This document shows positions 49,310 to 57,335 of a stretch of 64,000 nucleotides of DNA, in pieces. Position numbers and translations under genes: made by a program. Where the stretch lies: the IMG/VR virus record IMGVR_UViG_3300008110_010000, positions 155,356-219,355 of that record, one strand, 5' to 3'. Under the pieces are notes generated by a model that saw nothing but the letters and a program-made list of their open reading frames with translations, searched no databases and was not told where the DNA came from. Each line of letters begins with the position of its first letter. Within the stretch, counting starts at the first letter, position 1.

Positions 49310-49317
49310 GATATATA
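49310..49317 (+). promoter_or_regulatory. Late promoter GATATATA
   Basis: 12 nt before ATG 49330, followed by an A-rich leader. Confidence 0.6.
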
Positions 49318-50658: not shown

Positions 50659-52662
50659 ATGGCAGGGATTAAACAACTAAGTGAAGTTTATAAAAAGCAA
50701 GGAGCAGAATTCATTGACAATTTATTTGGAGATGAAGTTACAGTTTCTGAAAAATTGAATGGTATGTCTTTCTCCTTCGAGAAAAGCATAGGAGACGGAA
50801 CTATGTTCTTTTATAAAAGAGATCAGGTTAATCCCATTTCTAAAATTGATAGAGTTCTGATGAACTATTATGATGGACCTATTACATACGTGCAGGGGTT
50901 ACCAGATCTTACGAAAAATGAAATTCCTCCTGGTTGGAGATTTGGAACTGAATTTTTTATTAACGAAAGTCCAGTTTTATTGTCATACAACAGAGTCCCT
51001 AAGAATGGACTTGTTCTAACCCATATCATTGTTAAAAATCAATATGGGGATATCGAGAGAACTATTGTTGAAAAGGAGGAATTAGATTATTGGGCAGATC
51101 TATTAGATATTGAAAGATCCCCAATTATTTTTCAGGGAAAATTATCAGACCAACAAAAAGCCTCAATTAATGATTTTGTTAATTCTCCGTTTGATAGCTT
51201 AAAATCGTCTCATGGAACACAGAGCTTTGCTAAGTACTTAGTGAAAACTTTAAATCCGGATTTAGATAAAACATTACTTAATGATGATTTAGATCGTCCC
51301 ATAGAGGGTATAGTTTTCAGATTTGGACCAATCAGCGGAACTGGTGAATCTTTTTCTGCAAAAATTATTGATCCAGTTTTTGAAGACATCACAAGACAAA
51401 ACAATGTTAAAAAAGCCAGTTATTTCCCAAGCGACATCTACGGAATAACACTCCTGGAAGTAATGAATTATATCCTAGATAAAGGTATAGAGAGTTTTGA
51501 ATTTGCCGGGGAAGATCCACAGGACAGATACATTTCTTTTATCTCTGGTGTTTTCAATTCCTTCATAGAAGATAATGGTGAAAAATACTTGGGTCTCGAT
51601 TTTCAAGAGCCCGAATTTTTAAAACAAGACGGATTTGAATCTAATTTAGATCTGATTAGTAACGATCAGACTAAACAATTAGTTGCTCAAGATGAAAGCT
51701 ATGAATCTCTTTTTAAATTGATCTTATCAGCATTTAGAAAGATTAAGAAAAAATCTGGTGGTTTTTTTACTCCTGGAGTTATAGAGCAATTTAATTTATT
51801 AGTTAGAGAGATATCAGATTATCTCAATAGAAAACCTGTAATTGCGGAATCATTGATTCCAACATTTAGTGAGTTTAGAAAGGTTAAAAAATCTTTTGTA
51901 CCCGATGAAGAACAGGATGATGAAGACGAGGAAGAACCTATGGAAGAACCCGAGGATGAAATTATAGGGGAGCCTATAGAAACCCCTCAAGAAAATCCTG
52001 AAGATGTTGAAGAAGAACCTGAAGAGGTTCAAGAAGAACCACAGAAAGATCCAGAAGAAATCCAGGTTAAAGAAATAGATCCTGAAATTGCCTTTAAAAT
52101 GCAAGCTGCTTTAGGACAGATGGATCCTATTTCAGATCCTGCTGTCAATCCTGAATCACAGAATGTAAATGTAATTATTGGTAAGTTTCAACCATTTAAT
52201 AACGGTCATCTTAAAATGATCAAAAAAGCAAATCAGGTAAATGGAAATCCTGTTGCCTTGATGGTGGTTAATAATTCCAAGAGCTTCATTAATAGGGAAA
52301 TAATGAATAAGATGATGAAGATCATTTCTGATGAAATGTCTGATCTAATTCATTCGGTAAATTACGTTCCTGATGATCTACTTTCTACTTCTATTGAAAA
52401 AATTAAAGATAAATGTAACCCTAAGAGCTTAACAGTGGGATCTAAAAAGCTAGACAATTATTTGATCCAGAGCCGCACTCTTAAGAAAAGAAAAAAATTA
52501 CCCCAGGATTTCCAAATCCAAACTTCTCCGGAGTGGGTTATTTCCAGAGAGGTAATGAAGACTCTAGAAGATAAAGATTACATGCAATTCAAAAAGCATG
52601 TCCCTAAATCTCTTTCTTCTCTTTGGGAGGAATTACATCGCTGCTACGAATCAGCTAAATAG
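50659..52662 (+). CDS. Fusion of an RNA-ligase-type (Rnl2-like) nucleotidyltransferase, an acidic linker and a cytidylyltransferase-like Rossmann domain
   Basis: EKLNG (motif I), FGTEF (III), IEGIVFR (IV), AKIIDPVF (V); C-terminal IGKFQPFNNGH (HxGH variant). Confidence 0.7.
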   Translation: MAGIKQLSEVYKKQGAEFIDNLFGDEVTVSEKLNGMSFSFEKSIGDGTMFFYKRDQVNPISKIDRVLMNYYDGPITYVQGLPDLTKNEIPPGWRFGTEFFINESPVLLSYNRVPKNGLVLTHIIVKNQYGDIERTIVEKEELDYWADLLDIERSPIIFQGKLSDQQKASINDFVNSPFDSLKSSHGTQSFAKYLVKTLNPDLDKTLLNDDLDRPIEGIVFRFGPISGTGESFSAKIIDPVFEDITRQNNVKKASYFPSDIYGITLLEVMNYILDKGIESFEFAGEDPQDRYISFISGVFNSFIEDNGEKYLGLDFQEPEFLKQDGFESNLDLISNDQTKQLVAQDESYESLFKLILSAFRKIKKKSGGFFTPGVIEQFNLLVREISDYLNRKPVIAESLIPTFSEFRKVKKSFVPDEEQDDEDEEEPMEEPEDEIIGEPIETPQENPEDVEEEPEEVQEEPQKDPEEIQVKEIDPEIAFKMQAALGQMDPISDPAVNPESQNVNVIIGKFQPFNNGHLKMIKKANQVNGNPVALMVVNNSKSFINREIMNKMMKIISDEMSDLIHSVNYVPDDLLSTSIEKIKDKCNPKSLTVGSKKLDNYLIQSRTLKKRKKLPQDFQIQTSPEWVISREVMKTLEDKDYMQFKKHVPKSLSSLWEELHRCYESAK

Positions 52663-52704: not shown

Positions 52705-52712
52705 GATATATA
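52705..52712 (+). promoter_or_regulatory. Late promoter GATATATA, preceded by TATATTTG
   Basis: 12 nt before ATG 52725. Confidence 0.6.
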
Positions 52713-52724
52713 AAATAAAAATTA

Positions 52725-53570
52725 ATGGGAAAGCTCTCAAATTTTGAAAACAGTCAAAAATCTCCTCTTTTAGAAAACTCTGATAAAAGCAAAGCTGCTT
52801 TTGATAAAATAGTGGATTGTAAAATTAGACTTATTGCAGGATCTAATACTTTCTTTGGAAAGTTTTCTTTAAGCCTTGAATTTATTGAGGATCTTAATCT
52901 TCAATACAAAACTATGGCCACCGATGGTATGAAAATATACTATGACCCAGATTTTGTATTAAAACACAGCGAGGAAGAAATTAGATGGGTAATCTGTCAT
53001 GAAATCATGCATTGTGCTCTTTTTCATTTCATTAGAAGGCAAGCAAATCCCACAGCGTGGAACGCAGCTGCCGATTATGCCCTAAATCAATTAATAGACC
53101 CGGAATCTTACACAATTCCCCCAGGGGATCCACAGAGCCCTGAAGTAAGAAAAGCTAAAATATTTTTAGGTGCTTTGGGAAAAATGATACCAGGATGCTT
53201 AAATACTAGACCAGCTACCCCGGACAATCCTTACGGAAAACCAGAGTATAAGGGTTGGTCTGCAGAGCAAATTTATGACCATATAATAGAAAACAACGTT
53301 CAGCTTCCTCCAGAAGAAGGATGGAATTACGGAGGCGTTACACCCCCAGAATTTACTGGTTCTTCTAAGAAAAAATCTGCAGGGGCAACAGGTCCTTCTG
53401 GTCCTATCGCTAAAATTGGCGATTTCGTAAAAATAAAAAGCGGAGGGTTTGGTCGAATAACATCAATAGATGCAAATACTGGGGAAGCAATGGTTGACCC
53501 ATACTCTGAGGCTGATGCTATAGCACAGATAGAAAAACAATCCGGAAGAAAGGTTATATCAATAAAATAA
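52725..53570 (+). CDS. Zinc metallopeptidase domain protein (DUF2201 N-terminal-like) with a C-terminal KOW/SH3-like motif
   Basis: TMATDGMKIYYDPDFV, VICHEIMHCALFH and WNAAADYALN match this family; KIGDFVKIKSGGFGRITSID is KOW-like. Confidence 0.8.
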   Translation: MGKLSNFENSQKSPLLENSDKSKAAFDKIVDCKIRLIAGSNTFFGKFSLSLEFIEDLNLQYKTMATDGMKIYYDPDFVLKHSEEEIRWVICHEIMHCALFHFIRRQANPTAWNAAADYALNQLIDPESYTIPPGDPQSPEVRKAKIFLGALGKMIPGCLNTRPATPDNPYGKPEYKGWSAEQIYDHIIENNVQLPPEEGWNYGGVTPPEFTGSSKKKSAGATGPSGPIAKIGDFVKIKSGGFGRITSIDANTGEAMVDPYSEADAIAQIEKQSGRKVISIK

Positions 53571-53576
53571 ACTTCG

Positions 53577-54497
53577 ATGAAAATAGATATTAATGAATTA
53601 AGGAAGGTATCAGTAAAATTTGAACCGGAACCACCCCCACCACCACCTCCCCCTGGGACCCCACCGTCTCCTCCTCCCCCTAAGATTGAGGATTTTCCTG
53701 TTCCCCCTTCCCCTGATAAACCCTGGGACGACGAGGACGGAGGAGACGCCGGAGGAGCAGGAAACCAAGCTGGTGAAAAACCTAGGGTAATTGACGTTGA
53801 TCCGGAAAACATAGATGAATTAAAGGAAAAATGGAGAAGGGAGGTCGAAAAGGCAAGAAGATCTGGTGGACTTCCCCCAGAATTACAAAAATCTCTGGAC
53901 AAATTCAACGCAGGTAAAGTTGATTGGAAGGGTGATTTGAAGAGATTTGTTACCGGCCTTTCCGCTAAAAGAGAATATTTTTTACCTAACAAAAGGTTCC
54001 TAAGTAGAGGACAGGTTTTATGGGGTACCAAAAGAGTTAAAGAAGGTTTTGATGTTCTAACCCTGATCGTGGATACTTCAGGATCCATCTCCCAAAAAGA
54101 ATTGGAGGTATTTATTAACGAGGCTTATGCAATCGTAGAGGAATTTAATCCAAGAAAAACTTACGTTCTTTTCTTTGATACTAAGGTATATGAACCGGTG
54201 ACTGAAGTAGAAAGAGGTGAAAACATTAAGGTTAATAAAGCATACGGAGGAGGAGGAACTAGCTTTCTTGAACCTTTCCAATGGATAGAGAAGAATCTAT
54301 TAGGTCAGGTAAATATGGGCCCAGTTGTATTCTTTACTGACGGTTATCCAACATCAGGAGGATGGCCATCATCGAATGATTATGGAATCAGCACCTATGA
54401 TAAAAAAGTGATGTGGATTATAATACATCAGGATTACCCAAACAACGATCCTAATGTTGTAGTTCCGTTTGGAAATAGAACCGATCTAGTTTACTAA
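53577..54497 (+). CDS. vWA domain protein (DUF2201 C-terminal-like) with a Pro-rich N-terminal linker
   Basis: MIDAS motif IVDTSGSIS, GGGGTSF, VFFTDGY; VDWKGDLKRF; poly-Pro stretch. Confidence 0.85.
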   Translation: MKIDINELRKVSVKFEPEPPPPPPPPGTPPSPPPPKIEDFPVPPSPDKPWDDEDGGDAGGAGNQAGEKPRVIDVDPENIDELKEKWRREVEKARRSGGLPPELQKSLDKFNAGKVDWKGDLKRFVTGLSAKREYFLPNKRFLSRGQVLWGTKRVKEGFDVLTLIVDTSGSISQKELEVFINEAYAIVEEFNPRKTYVLFFDTKVYEPVTEVERGENIKVNKAYGGGGTSFLEPFQWIEKNLLGQVNMGPVVFFTDGYPTSGGWPSSNDYGISTYDKKVMWIIIHQDYPNNDPNVVVPFGNRTDLVY

Positions 54498-54500
54498 AAA

Positions 54501-54508
54501 GATATATA
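54501..54508 (+). promoter_or_regulatory. Late promoter GATATATA
   Basis: 24 nt before ATG 54533. Confidence 0.55.
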
Positions 54509-54532
54509 GAAAAAAGAATATAAGATTAATAA

Positions 54533-56161
54533 ATGCCAAGCATTAAAAAATTTGACCAATATGTAAACGAGGATTATTCATTAAAAAGTATGATATCTGG
54601 TGTTGGAAGCTGGATTAAAAATCTCGTAAGCAAGATTAAAGGTGGAGGAATAGAGAAAGTTCCCAACACGCCCGAAGCACACGTGAAAGCTGGAAAGCCC
54701 ATGGTAAATTATTATAGCTGTGCACGTGGCGGCGGTAAATCTGTGGAGCAACAAGTTGAAGACACTTATGGTATTAAGTTTGAATCTAAAGCATTCGAAG
54801 ACTATGAGATTGATGAGGCAACTATGAAGGATTACGGAGATATTGAAATGTTAAAATATCCTGATAAAGAAGCTGGAATTTCAAACATGAAAGGAGATGC
54901 TCTGAAGAGCATGATACTTAAAAGATTTGATAGTTTAGTTAGAGGCGGCTACGATAAGCCAATCTTTATTTATGGAGCTCCTGGTATAGGTAAAACCGAG
55001 ATAGTTGCTAGCGTAGCTTCCCAACTTTGTATAGATCTTATAACGGTTGATCTTCAGTTCATGGATCCTACTGACTTCTTGGGTATTCCATCAACTGATG
55101 ATATCCCGAAAGAATTTTTCACTGAAAAAGATATAGAAAAAAGAATTGGAATTCTAAGTAAGCTCGGAAAGGGAATAACTAGATCTAACCCTCCATCTTG
55201 GCTTCCATTAGACAATGGCGAACCAATCACAGTGGTTGGTGGAGACGGCAATGAGGAAAAATCCGACGGACCTGGTGGAATTATTTTCTTTGACGAAATG
55301 AACAGGGCAAACCCTCCAGTTATTGCTGCAATGATGGTACTTCTTCAACAGAGAAGAGTTGGTACCGAGTATAATCTTCCTAGTAAATGGTTGATTGTAG
55401 CAGCGGGAAATAGAAAGGAAGACGATTTACCTGGTGAGATCAATGATTTAGGTTCAGCTCTTATTAACCGTTGTGAGGTAGTAAACTACCTTGCTAGTCC
55501 TAAAGAATGGATCGAATGGGTTAAAACCTCTCCAATAAAATTGAAGGGTGCATTTGGAAGAACTGCCAATGAAATTGTACTTCCTGAATTGATAGCATTT
55601 ATGGAATTTTCTAAAGATTATTTCTACACTTTAAATGCAGGAAAAAAAGGAAGAGTATTTGCATCCCCAAGATCTTGGATCGATGCTTCTAAGGCTCTTT
55701 ACTCAGAAATGGATTACCTCAGAAGACAAGGAACCAATTCAATTTCTAAAGAAGAGATGATTGATATTTTTTCTAGAAACGTGGGTCCAGAACCTGCACA
55801 GGCATTCGTTGAATTTTATACAGAATCACAGAATACCAAAATGGAAGATGTTGTTAAGGTTTTTGACGATCCTGATAACGCTCCTCTTCCAGAAAAAATT
55901 GGTGGACAATACAAGCCAGATAAATCTTACTATTTAATAGCTGCTATAGTTGATAAATCTAGACAAATCAGTCCTGATGGGAAACTTACTGCAAGCCAAT
56001 TCTCTAATGCGATAGATTGGTCTATTAGATTAGATTCTGCTGAATATGGAACTGCTTTTGTAAGCTTATTACTTTCTAAGCACCCTTACATAACAAAATC
56101 TGGTATCGAATACATTAAACACATGGAAAGATACACTGACAGATACATGCCAGACAAATAA
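54533..56161 (+). CDS. MoxR/AAA_5-type AAA+ ATPase with a long N-terminal extension
   Basis: Walker A IYGAPGIGKT, Walker B IIFFDEMNRA, VAAGNR, ALINR and ASPRSW motifs. Confidence 0.9.
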   Translation: MPSIKKFDQYVNEDYSLKSMISGVGSWIKNLVSKIKGGGIEKVPNTPEAHVKAGKPMVNYYSCARGGGKSVEQQVEDTYGIKFESKAFEDYEIDEATMKDYGDIEMLKYPDKEAGISNMKGDALKSMILKRFDSLVRGGYDKPIFIYGAPGIGKTEIVASVASQLCIDLITVDLQFMDPTDFLGIPSTDDIPKEFFTEKDIEKRIGILSKLGKGITRSNPPSWLPLDNGEPITVVGGDGNEEKSDGPGGIIFFDEMNRANPPVIAAMMVLLQQRRVGTEYNLPSKWLIVAAGNRKEDDLPGEINDLGSALINRCEVVNYLASPKEWIEWVKTSPIKLKGAFGRTANEIVLPELIAFMEFSKDYFYTLNAGKKGRVFASPRSWIDASKALYSEMDYLRRQGTNSISKEEMIDIFSRNVGPEPAQAFVEFYTESQNTKMEDVVKVFDDPDNAPLPEKIGGQYKPDKSYYLIAAIVDKSRQISPDGKLTASQFSNAIDWSIRLDSAEYGTAFVSLLLSKHPYITKSGIEYIKHMERYTDRYMPDK

Positions 56162-56177
56162 TAAAATTAAAACAATT

Positions 56178-56203
56178 AAACCCCCGGCTTTCGGGGGTTT
56201 TTT
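56178..56203 (+). terminator. Rho-independent terminator
   Basis: AAACCCCCG-gcttt-CGGGGGTTT stem followed by a T tract, after the AAA gene. Confidence 0.9.
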
Positions 56204-57149: not shown

Positions 57150-57335
57150 ATGGAAAACTACGAAAAATTAGTTGCTCTTGTAGAATCAATGAGAGAAAAT
57201 GTGGATAAGTTTTTTGATAAGGGTAATAAGTCTGCTGGAACCAGAGTTAGAACTCAGTGTCAAGAATTAAAAAAATTAGCACAAGAACTTCGCTTAGATG
57301 TTCAAAATGCTAAAAAATCCACTACAGAGCAATAA
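57150..57335 (+). CDS. Histone H1-like Hc1 family small DNA-binding protein
   Basis: KGNKSAGTRVR...ELKKLAQELR matches the Bacteroidota Hc1-like motif KGNKAAGTRAR. Confidence 0.8.
   Translation: MENYEKLVALVESMRENVDKFFDKGNKSAGTRVRTQCQELKKLAQELRLDVQNAKKSTTEQ

What the first reader, a model, noticed from the sequence alone, without database searches (positions are those of the whole stretch)
52725..56203. Metallopeptidase + vWA + MoxR AAA trio with an in-frame split and separate late promoters
Seen: the HEIMH peptidase ORF ends with TAA at 53568-53570. After only ACT TCG, the vWA ORF starts in the same frame at 53577. A MoxR-type ATPase with about 110 extra N-terminal residues follows, then a strong terminator. 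A KOW-like motif and a poly-Pro linker flank the junction. Known: DUF2201-type proteins usually carry the peptidase and vWA domains in one chain next to a MoxR ATPase, and MoxR-vWA pairs act as remodelling chaperones. Inference: this is either a true two-subunit version or a stop-readthrough product, forming an ATP-driven remodelling/proteolysis machine. With the leaders above it could act in head maturation or on a host target just after injection.
Basis: partly seen in the sequence, partly recalled or inferred. Interest (0 to 1): 0.78.

Follow-up and report, generated by a model that had tools for sequence, protein, structure and literature searches.

The report
Split peptidase–vWA–MoxR phage operon
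A freshwater jumbo phage carries a known kind of ATP-driven chaperone/protease gene set in which the usual single peptidase-vWA protein is truly and anciently split into two genes; the same-frame look is coincidence, and tag-like N-termini suggest the enzymes are loaded into the phage head.

Summary
A 281-aa HEIMH zincin ORF ends at TAA 53568-53570. Six bases later, in the same frame, a 306-aa vWA ORF starts. A 542-aa MoxR-type ATPase and a strong terminator follow.

The TAA is real. Three independent metagenome assemblies and one RNA-library contig carry it.

The split is conserved in about 48 protein clusters down to 36% identity. The frame relation is not: 3 of 11 lineages are in frame, which is what chance gives. 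The stop is always TAA and the junction RNA is unstructured. Readthrough is therefore rejected; this is a two-gene form.

The split lies in the linker of the usually fused DUF2201 protein, just after an SH3-like insert. Every stand-alone vWA subunit has a conserved N-terminal element, which may be a docking piece (inferred).

The GATATATA promoter-like core before the peptidase and ATPase genes also precedes the sheath, portal, fibre and prohead-protease genes, so it marks a late class.

The peptidase and ATPase begin with propeptides like the T4 capsid-targeting sequence, and the genome encodes a gp21-type protease. Head packaging is likely but not shown.

A second trio in the same genome has a dead peptidase.

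The MoxR plus peptidase-vWA pair was already described in T4-like jumbo phages, so this is a new variant of a known kind.

The parts
52706..52720 (+). Promoter-like element ATATATAAAATAAAA, the extended form of the GATATATA late-class core, 4 nt before the peptidase ATG
   Evidence: There are three exact copies in the window, at 49311, 52706 and 56228. On the + strand, 37 of 57 copies of the ATATATA core lie within 45 nt upstream of an ORF start, although only 4.2% of positions qualify. The same core precedes the sheath, portal, fibre and protease genes.
52725..53570 (+). Zincin peptidase subunit, 281 aa. Leader residues 1-17 (52725-52775); core residues 17-205; HEIMH 52998-53012 with a third His at 53025-53027; disordered linker 53349-53399.
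   Evidence: DUF2201_N positions 16-135, 80.2 bits. AF2 model with pLDDT 83 overall and above 90 in the core. Foldseek hits to selecase, jannalysin and SPRTN and to AFDB 'putative metallopeptidase domain' clusters.
53406..53567 (+). C-terminal SH3/Tudor-like tail of the peptidase subunit (residues 228-281): three strands and a helix
   Evidence: It is present in all 48 short homologues and absent from the 5 closest fused ones. It aligns with an insert in the fused protein P0342.
53568..53576 (+). Junction: TAA stop plus the 6-nt spacer ACTTCG
   Evidence: The TAA is intact in contigs of three independent DNA runs and one RNA-library contig. Junction table of relatives. The RNA here is less structured than shuffles, z +2.1.
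53577..54497 (+). vWA co-chaperone subunit, 306 aa. Conserved N-terminal element 53577-53627; Pro-rich/acidic linker 53628-53762; helical part (C-terminal half of the DUF2201_N model) 53763-54005; vWA-like domain 54057-54479; MIDAS DTSGS 54072-54086.
   Evidence: D166, S168, S170, T254 and D255 are invariant in 39 sequences.
54502..54508 (+). Second, weaker promoter-like core (within GATATATAG), 24 nt before the ATPase ATG
54533..56161 (+). MoxR-type AAA+ ATPase, 542 aa. Leader residues 1-13 (54533-54571, ending VNE); N-terminal extension to about residue 140; Walker A 54974-54997; Walker B DE 55292-55297; conserved Arg 55469-55471; SPRSW motif 55664-55678.
   Evidence: AAA_5 33.8 bits and AAA_3 28.4 bits, both over their cut-offs. 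phrog_1297, E 1.7e-50. Invariant columns. The best full-domain match among solved structures is midasin. The leader is conserved in 106 of 120 homologues.
56178..56200 (+). Intrinsic terminator closing the operon
   Evidence: 10-bp stem, 6 G-C pairs, T run.

Best explanation
This is a late operon of an uncultivated freshwater jumbo phage related to T4 in its head-maturation genes. It encodes the MoxR AAA+ ATPase plus metallopeptidase-vWA co-chaperone system already noted in T4-like jumbo phages. Here the usually single peptidase-vWA polypeptide has undergone gene fission.

Shown:
- The two halves are separate genes. Each peptidase gene ends with TAA and the vWA gene starts 1-23 nt later, in any frame.
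- The cut lies in the variable linker, just after an SH3-like insert.
- Every stand-alone vWA subunit carries a conserved N-terminal element of about 16 residues.
- Both catalytic signatures are intact (HExxH plus a further His; MIDAS).
- The promoter-like core is the one used by virion genes.
- The peptidase and ATPase, but not the vWA subunit, begin with a propeptide. It matches the T4 capsid-targeting sequence in its aromatic P7/P4, aliphatic P3 and Glu P1 positions.
- The genome encodes a gp21-type prohead protease.

Inferred:
- The vWA gene is translated by restart coupled to the peptidase gene.
- The SH3-like tail and the vWA N-terminal element dock the two subunits together.
- The ATPase hexamer engages the vWA domain as NorQ engages NorD. 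It remodels a target held at the MIDAS site so that the zincin can cut it.
- The tagged proteins are loaded into the prohead core and trimmed after Glu. They then act either during head maturation or in the next host after ejection.

My confidence by layer: real two-gene split about 0.95; late-class operon about 0.75; head packaging about 0.55; remodelling-plus-cleavage mechanism about 0.5.
For: Split is real:
- Searches show the ORFs and the junction.
- An identical contig comes from another sample.
- 18 runs from 13 studies hold the sequence.
- The TAA is intact in three DNA runs, one of them a strain with 12 differences and a 3-nt deletion, and in one RNA-library contig.

Split is conserved:
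- 48 short peptidase clusters were found and many stand-alone vWA proteins of 300-360 aa.
- The same syntenic slot holds the split forms and the fused P0044.
- A second split trio lies in the same genome.

Not readthrough.

Family:
- The family has 15,291 representative clusters, mostly fused.
- The system is described in the literature (PMC7824862).

Late class: plus a weak gp55 homologue.

Leaders:
- The T4 IPIII, IPII and IPI N-termini were read from the T4 record.
- The T4 targeting and processing positions are taken from PMC9026906.
- 7 ORF N-termini score at least 10 bits against 0.23 expected.
- The leader is conserved in 106 of 120 ATPase homologues.
- Peptidase and ATPase carry the leader together in 11 loci and lack it together in 2.
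- The genome encodes a gp21-type protease.
- A CHAP-domain enzyme carries the same leader.

NorQD mechanism: PMC13036017.
Against: - No tool result shows that the three proteins bind each other. No complex model could be run.
- The vWA subunit has no leader, so packaging it needs piggy-backing.
- One related lineage (L008) and cyanophage S-TIM5 lack the leaders on both proteins, so packaging is not essential to the system.
- The paralogous trio has QGISH in place of HEIMH, so proteolysis is not always needed.
- The likeness to the T4 capsid-targeting sequence is a short motif and could be convergent.
- Promoter class and timing rest on motif association only.
- The target is unknown.
Confidence: 0.6

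Rival explanations
1. Programmed stop-codon readthrough (or recoding) joins the two ORFs into one DUF2201-type chain of about 590 aa.
For: In this genome the two ORFs are in frame, separated by only TAA plus two sense codons. The same holds in L008 and L020.
Against: The frame is shared in only 3 of 11 lineages, which is the chance rate, and the 61%-identical relative L024 is out of frame. The stop is always TAA, here followed by A. L010 has a second in-frame stop in its 4-nt gap. The junction RNA is less structured than shuffles. The own-genome paralogue is out of frame. Every vWA ORF has its own ATG and a conserved N-terminus.
Confidence: 0.03
2. The TAA is a sequencing or assembly error, or the gene is a recent pseudogene.
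For: None beyond the unusual in-frame layout.
Against: The junction is identical in independent assemblies from different studies and years, including a diverged strain. The split is conserved down to 36% identity, with intact motifs on both halves.
Confidence: 0.01
3. The trio is a cytoplasmic assembly chaperone/protease that helps build virions late in infection, as proposed for T4-like jumbo phages. It is not packaged, and the shared N-terminal motif serves another purpose, such as binding the scaffold only transiently or helping expression.
For: This role was proposed by PMC7824862. There is a precedent in ATV p618/p892 (cited in PMC7159879 and PMC7824862). The promoters are of the late class. 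Lineages without leaders keep the trio. S-TIM5 places it next to Hsp20.
Against: The leader matches the T4 capsid-targeting sequence at exactly the positions shown to matter in T4 (PMC9026906). It ends in the protease-type (L/I/V)-x-E site. It is shared with a CHAP cell-wall enzyme and with genes next to the capsid gene.
Confidence: 0.3
4. The split serves differential dosage or localisation. The peptidase subunit alone is packaged, while the vWA subunit stays in the cell or is made in a different amount, so the two need not form a stable complex.
For: Only the peptidase and ATPase carry leaders. Stand-alone metallopeptidase-domain proteins also exist in cellular genomes.
Against: The gap between stop and start is 1-23 nt and there is no promoter core in between, which suggests coupled synthesis. 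The SH3-like tail and the vWA N-terminal element are conserved in all split forms examined.
Confidence: 0.1

Closest known systems
MoxR AAA+ ATPase plus vWA co-chaperone fused to an N-terminal metallopeptidase, in group 2.2 (T4-like) jumbo phages (Iyer et al. 2021, PMC7824862)
   Same: The same three domains and the same adjacency, in phages with a gp21-type prohead protease. A virion-related role was proposed.
   Different: Here the peptidase and vWA parts are separate genes. The peptidase has an SH3-like tail and the vWA subunit a conserved N-terminal element. The peptidase and ATPase carry leaders like the T4 capsid-targeting sequence, and the ATPase has an N-terminal extension of about 110 aa. 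There are two paralogous sets per genome.
Cyanophage S-TIM5 Hsp20 / ATPase / 'HNH endonuclease' cluster, where the last is a fused DUF2201 protein (phrog_1314)
   Same: Homologous ATPase (26% identity) and homologous DUF2201 protein, encoded side by side.
   Different: The S-TIM5 DUF2201 protein is a fused 382-aa chain and the ATPase has 331 aa. Neither has a leader, an extension or an SH3-like insert. The 'HNH endonuclease' label looks like a misannotation of the HExxH...H motif.
NorQ/NorD, and likewise RavA/ViaA and CbbQ/CbbO: bacterial MoxR-vWA remodelling pairs
   Same: An AAA_5/AAA_3-type ATPase with a MIDAS-bearing vWA partner. In NorQD the ATPase pulls on a linker of the vWA protein (PMC13036017).
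   Different: Those pairs insert metals or repair enzymes and have no peptidase. Sequence similarity to the window's proteins is limited to the generic domains.
Acidianus two-tailed virus p618 (MoxR) and p892 (vWA)
   Same: A virus-encoded MoxR-vWA pair tied to virion morphogenesis (cited in PMC7159879 and PMC7824862).
   Different: It is an archaeal virus with no peptidase domain and no T4-type leader. Homology to the window's proteins was not tested here.
T4 internal proteins IPI, IPII and IPIII, and Alt, with their capsid-targeting sequence
   Same: An N-terminal propeptide of 10-19 residues with aromatic residues at the targeting positions and an (L/I)-x-E cleavage site (PMC9026906). Compare T4 IPIII MKTYQEFIAE with this phage's MKKYSEFISE and the ATPase's MPSIKKFDQYVNE.
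   Different: The cargo here would be a large ATPase and a zincin rather than small basic proteins. Packaging and cleavage are not shown.

Membership tests
DUF2201-type metallopeptidase-vWA co-chaperone (Pfam PF13203 + PF09967) | Zincin motif HExxH with a further conserved His | tested here: met
   HEIMH plus H101. H96 and H101 are invariant and H92 and E93 nearly invariant in 55 sequences.
DUF2201-type metallopeptidase-vWA co-chaperone (Pfam PF13203 + PF09967) | Both Pfam models matched above their curated cut-offs | tested here: met
   PF13203 scores 80.2 bits (N-terminal half, on the peptidase ORF) and 23.2 bits (C-terminal half, on the vWA ORF), against a cut-off of 23.2. PF09967 scores 49.6 against 26.4.
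DUF2201-type metallopeptidase-vWA co-chaperone (Pfam PF13203 + PF09967) | MIDAS residues in the vWA domain (DxSxS ... T ... D) | tested here: met
   D166, S168, S170, T254 and D255 are invariant in 39 sequences.
DUF2201-type metallopeptidase-vWA co-chaperone (Pfam PF13203 + PF09967) | Peptidase and vWA domains in one polypeptide | tested here: not met
   They are two ORFs separated by TAA plus 6 nt. The split is conserved in relatives. The locus is therefore a split variant, not a standard member.
DUF2201-type metallopeptidase-vWA co-chaperone (Pfam PF13203 + PF09967) | Encoded next to a MoxR-type ATPase | tested here: met
   The ATPase gene starts 35 nt after the vWA stop. The same holds in 12 related loci.
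MoxR-class AAA+ ATPase | Walker A and Walker B motifs, and AAA_5/AAA_3 models above cut-off | tested here: met
   GAPGIGKT and FFDE are present. AAA_5 scores 33.8 against 22 and AAA_3 scores 28.4 against 27. The motifs are invariant in 37 sequences.
MoxR-class AAA+ ATPase | Arginine finger before strand 5 and a sensor-2 Arg (the LDRF-like and SPR motifs, as recalled for MoxR proteins) | tested here: inconclusive
   R313 (in ALINRC) and P379-R-x-W382 are invariant. Their assignment as finger and sensor rests on recalled family knowledge, not on a structure.
MoxR-class AAA+ ATPase | Hexamer formation, ATP hydrolysis and binding of the vWA partner | not testable with these tools
   No complex prediction or assay was available.
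Cargo carrying a T4-type capsid-targeting sequence | N-terminal propeptide of 10-19 residues with hydrophobic or aromatic targeting residues and an (L/I/V)-x-E processing site | tested here: met
   The ATPase starts MPSIKKFDQYVNE. The peptidase starts MGKLSNF...PLLE, a long form like T4 IPI. The T4 sequences were read, and the important positions come from PMC9026906. Enrichment is 7 ORF N-termini against 0.23 expected.
Cargo carrying a T4-type capsid-targeting sequence | A gp21-type prohead protease in the same genome | tested here: met
   PF03420 scores 35.2 bits against a cut-off of 27. phrog_207, E 2.9e-37.
Cargo carrying a T4-type capsid-targeting sequence | Protein present in virions with the propeptide removed | not testable with these tools
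   The phage is uncultivated and no proteome exists.
Programmed stop-codon readthrough | Reading-frame relation conserved among relatives | tested here: not met
   3 of 11 lineages are in frame.
Programmed stop-codon readthrough | Leaky stop context or a stimulating downstream RNA structure | tested here: not met
   The stop is TAA in all 14 junctions. The fold z-score is +2.1, so there is no structure. No Rfam match reaches a gathering score.
Late (virion-gene) promoter class of this phage | Upstream motif shared with structural genes | tested here: met
   The GATATATA core precedes 41 ORFs. These include the sheath, portal, two fibre genes, the prohead protease and a tube-like gene.
Late (virion-gene) promoter class of this phage | Late timing of transcription and a dedicated late sigma factor | tested here: inconclusive
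   Only a weak T4 gp55 homologue was found (E 3.6e-6). No time-course data exist.

The most novel reading that the evidence does not exclude
A large family of uncultivated aquatic jumbo phages loads a complete ATP-driven remodelling protease (MoxR hexamer, vWA adaptor, zincin) into the capsid through T4-type targeting propeptides. The phage then ejects it with the DNA, so it works in the new host before any phage gene is expressed, for example against defence or nucleoid proteins. On this reading the fission of the peptidase-vWA chain, with its SH3-like tail and N-terminal element acting as a snap-together joint, lets the cargo travel as smaller pieces and reassemble after ejection.
Probability: 0.25. 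Interest if true: 0.75.

Novelty: new variant of a known kind. Interest (0 to 1): 0.45.

Why it matters
MoxR-vWA systems are widespread but poorly understood, and the phage versions have only been predicted.

- This locus gives a natural two-piece version of the peptidase-vWA protein, which marks the domain boundary and a likely docking module.
- It ties the system to virion genes through a shared promoter class.
- It attaches head-targeting-like tags to a large enzyme pair.

If the tags work as in T4, phages would be delivering an ATP-powered protease along with their DNA. That would also give a ready test system, because the expected mature N-termini can be stated.

Finally, the common database label 'HNH endonuclease' for these proteins looks wrong.

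Tried and rejected
- Readthrough and sequencing error were rejected.
- I considered SH3 binding to the poly-Pro tract as the general docking mode. I dropped it because many relatives replace the Pro tract with acidic or Gly-rich linkers, while the N-terminal element stays.
- I first reported no promoter inside the trio, on the basis of the 15-mer alone. I corrected this after the shorter core was found at 54502.
- The number of fission or fusion events could not be settled. The tree needs 3 changes, but well-supported branches force only 1. The AU test does not reject one clade of fused forms (p 0.28).
- PADLOC and NCBIfam gave only generic AAA hits.
- DNA search of cultured phages found nothing.
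- Sequence and profile searches of solved structures gave only selecase (weak), midasin and generic AAA or vWA hits.
- The Atlas search of the ATPase extension scored 0.56, a lead to CobS_N only.
How the two halves pack therefore remains unmodelled.
Full report
**Observation.**
- The window lies at 155356-219355 of a 219-kb IMG/VR virus record, 35% G+C, estimated 79% complete.
- ORF 52725-53570 (281 aa) carries HEIMH and ends in TAA at 53568-53570.
- After the spacer ACTTCG, an ATG at 53577 opens a 306-aa ORF in the same frame.
- A 542-aa ORF (54533-56161) follows, and then a terminator with a 10-bp stem at 56178-56200.
- Pfam places the first ORF on positions 16-135 of DUF2201_N.
- It places the second on positions 171-257 of the same model plus the DUF2201 vWA-like domain.
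- It places the third on AAA_5 and AAA_3, both over their cut-offs.
- PHROGs puts the two halves on positions 7-168 and 168-386 of a single family, phrog_1314. That family is labelled 'HNH endonuclease', which looks like a mislabel of the HExxH...H motif.

**Is the stop real?**
- An identical stretch sits on an independent IMG/VR contig.
- Eighteen public runs from 13 studies hold 89-100% of its words.
- Contigs of three DNA runs from different studies span the junction with the TAA unchanged. One of them is a strain with 12 substitutions and a 3-nt deletion in the Pro tract.
- A contig from an RNA library (53420-53583) also spans the junction unchanged, although DNA carry-over cannot be excluded.

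**Split or readthrough?**
- A homologue search returned 48 clusters of 227-295 aa with the peptidase part only, down to 36% identity, and five fused proteins of 434-487 aa.
- The vWA ORF likewise has many stand-alone relatives of 300-360 aa.
- I tabulated 14 junctions, which represent 11 lineages. The stop is always TAA and the gap is 1-23 nt.
- The two ORFs share a frame in only three lineages: the window, L008 and L020. The 61%-identical L024 is out of frame, and L010 has a second stop in its gap.
- The junction RNA folds worse than 197 of 200 shuffles, and no Rfam family reaches its gathering score.
- The in-frame layout is therefore chance, and the two-gene form is the functional state.
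- The fused relative P0044 occupies exactly the same syntenic slot. That block runs: helicase, three small genes, a protein of about 660 aa, the peptidase/vWA gene(s), the ATPase, proteins of 179 and 108 aa, and Hc1. Split and fused forms are therefore orthologues.
- The family as a whole is overwhelmingly fused. It has 15,291 representative clusters, and the best hits are mostly 360-610 aa.
- How many fission or fusion events occurred could not be resolved.

**Anatomy of the cut.**
- The AF2 model of the peptidase subunit has a mean pLDDT of 83.
- It shows a disordered leader (residues 1-15), a confident compact core (17-205) and a disordered linker (209-225).
- It ends in a small three-strand-plus-helix domain (230-275).
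- The core resembles the minimal zincins selecase and jannalysin, and SPRTN. It also matches AFDB 'putative metallopeptidase domain' clusters, some of them stand-alone proteins of cellular organisms.
- The tail gives weak SH3-type hits in 10 of 55 homologues. It aligns with an insert in the fused 606-aa protein P0342.
- Other long fused relatives carry Zn-ribbon or CxxCxGxG inserts, or low-complexity runs, at the same place. The linker is thus a hot spot for insertions, and here the gene was cut just after an SH3-like insert.
- All stand-alone vWA subunits start with a conserved element, MK-x-x-[VI]-x-[DE]-[LI]-[RK]-K-[VI]-x-[VI]. A Pro-rich or acidic linker follows.
- I infer, but could not test, that this element and the SH3-like tail hold the subunits together.

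**Expression.**
- The 15-mer ATATATAAAATAAAA occurs exactly at 49311, 52706 and 56228.
- Its core ATATATA is 15-fold enriched just upstream of ORF starts. It precedes 41 ORFs.
- These include the tail sheath (E 5e-117), the portal (E 6e-64), two fibre proteins, the prohead protease and a tube-like protein.
- A core copy (within GATATATAG) lies at 54502, 24 nt before the ATPase ATG. There is none before the vWA gene.
- A weak homologue of the T4 late sigma factor gp55 exists.
- The trio is thus a late-class unit with two promoter-like sites and one terminator.

**Leaders.**
- The ATPase begins MPSIKKFDQYVNE and the peptidase begins MGKLSNFENSQKSPLLE.
- T4 IPIII and IPII begin MKTYQEFIAE, and IPI begins with a 19-residue form that ends ITE.
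- In T4, residues 4 and 7 target the protein to the head, and residues 8 and 10 direct cleavage by gp21 (PMC9026906).
- The phage's leaders keep aromatic residues at P7 and P4, an aliphatic residue at P3 and Glu at P1.
- A matrix built from ATPase homologues finds 7 ORF N-termini at 10 bits or more, against 0.23 expected.
- One gene beside the capsid gene starts MKKYSEFISE, and a CHAP-domain enzyme carries the leader.
- The genome encodes a gp21-type protease.
- 106 of the 120 best ATPase homologues carry the leader. The forms of about 400 aa lack both the leader and the 110-aa extension.
- Peptidase and ATPase have leaders together in 11 loci and lack them together in two, the L008 lineage and S-TIM5.
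- Packaging into the head is therefore likely, but it is not shown.

**Second trio.**
- The genome holds exactly two DUF2201 vWA genes, each with its own ATPase.
- The second set lies at C1:66.8-71.2 kb on the minus strand, in the order ATPase, peptidase, vWA. It is also split and is out of frame.
- Its peptidase linker carries a long Gly-Glu repeat, and it reads QGISH where the first peptidase reads HEIMH.
- It is syntenic with L010 and L011, where the motif is intact.

**What is known.**
- Iyer et al. 2021 (PMC7824862) described a MoxR ATPase with a vWA co-chaperone fused to an N-terminal metallopeptidase in T4-like jumbo phages. They proposed a role in virion assembly and processing, and cited the ATV p618/p892 precedent.
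- NorQD shows how a MoxR ring pulls on a linker of its vWA partner (PMC13036017).
- The present locus is a split, tagged variant of that kind.

**Limits.**
- There is no evidence here for physical interaction, for a substrate, for timing of expression or for presence in virions.

Noticed in passing
G000:C1:66800-72030 (minus strand; L013:5826-10023): A second, paralogous operon. It encodes a 273-aa leader-bearing protein, a 522-aa MoxR ATPase, a 323-aa peptidase subunit and a 272-aa vWA subunit. The peptidase has a Gly-Glu repeat of about 45 units and reads QGISH in place of HExxH. A nuclease-like 201-aa gene follows. The peptidase and vWA genes are again split, with 1 nt between stop and ATG and in different frames.
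   Followed up: partly
window 49330, 52725, 54533, 56248, 56807 (ORF starts); elsewhere in G000, e.g. C1:905, 58107, 62492, 72022, 133762: Many ORFs share an N-terminal leader, M-x-x-[IL]-x-x-[FYW]-x-x-[FY]-[VIL]-x-E, that resembles the T4 capsid-targeting sequence. Carriers include a CHAP-domain enzyme and genes next to the capsid gene. The capsid protein itself has ...SLNE followed by SAG near residue 43.
   Followed up: partly
window 50659-52662: A 667-aa protein with a weak RNA-ligase-like N-terminal part and a cytidylyl/adenylyl-transferase-like C-terminal part, joined by a long acidic linker. It always sits just upstream of the trio in related phages.
   Followed up: no
window 57150-57335: A 61-aa gene for an Hc1 histone H1-like protein (Pfam E 1.6e-23), conserved downstream of the trio in relatives.
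   Followed up: partly
window 53327-54088 (minus strand): The 253-aa ORF opposite the junction is a shadow of the Pro/Gly-rich coding stretch, not a likely gene.
   Followed up: no
window 53666 (run X17): A natural strain has a 3-nt deletion and two substitutions inside the poly-Pro tract, so the linker length varies within the population.
   Followed up: no
L024:4854-5697; L020:5798-8882: In one relative (61% identity) the vWA gene is further broken into 142-aa and 149-aa pieces. This may be a frameshift or an assembly error. Another relative has two ATPase genes in tandem after the vWA gene.
   Followed up: no
P0303, P0308, P0309, P0312 (fused relatives): Fused DUF2201 proteins of 520-600 aa carry Zn-ribbon or DnaJ-like CxxCxGxG inserts at the same linker where this phage has the SH3-like module and the split.
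   Followed up: no
G000:C1:115479-115727: A third, shorter AAA_5-type ATPase frame (317 aa) lies between the portal and fibre genes. It is unrelated to the two trios.
   Followed up: no
NC_019516 (S-TIM5) 157963-159111 and phrog_1314: Fused DUF2201 peptidase-vWA proteins are annotated as 'HNH endonuclease' in phage records and in PHROGs. This is probably a misannotation.
   Followed up: partly
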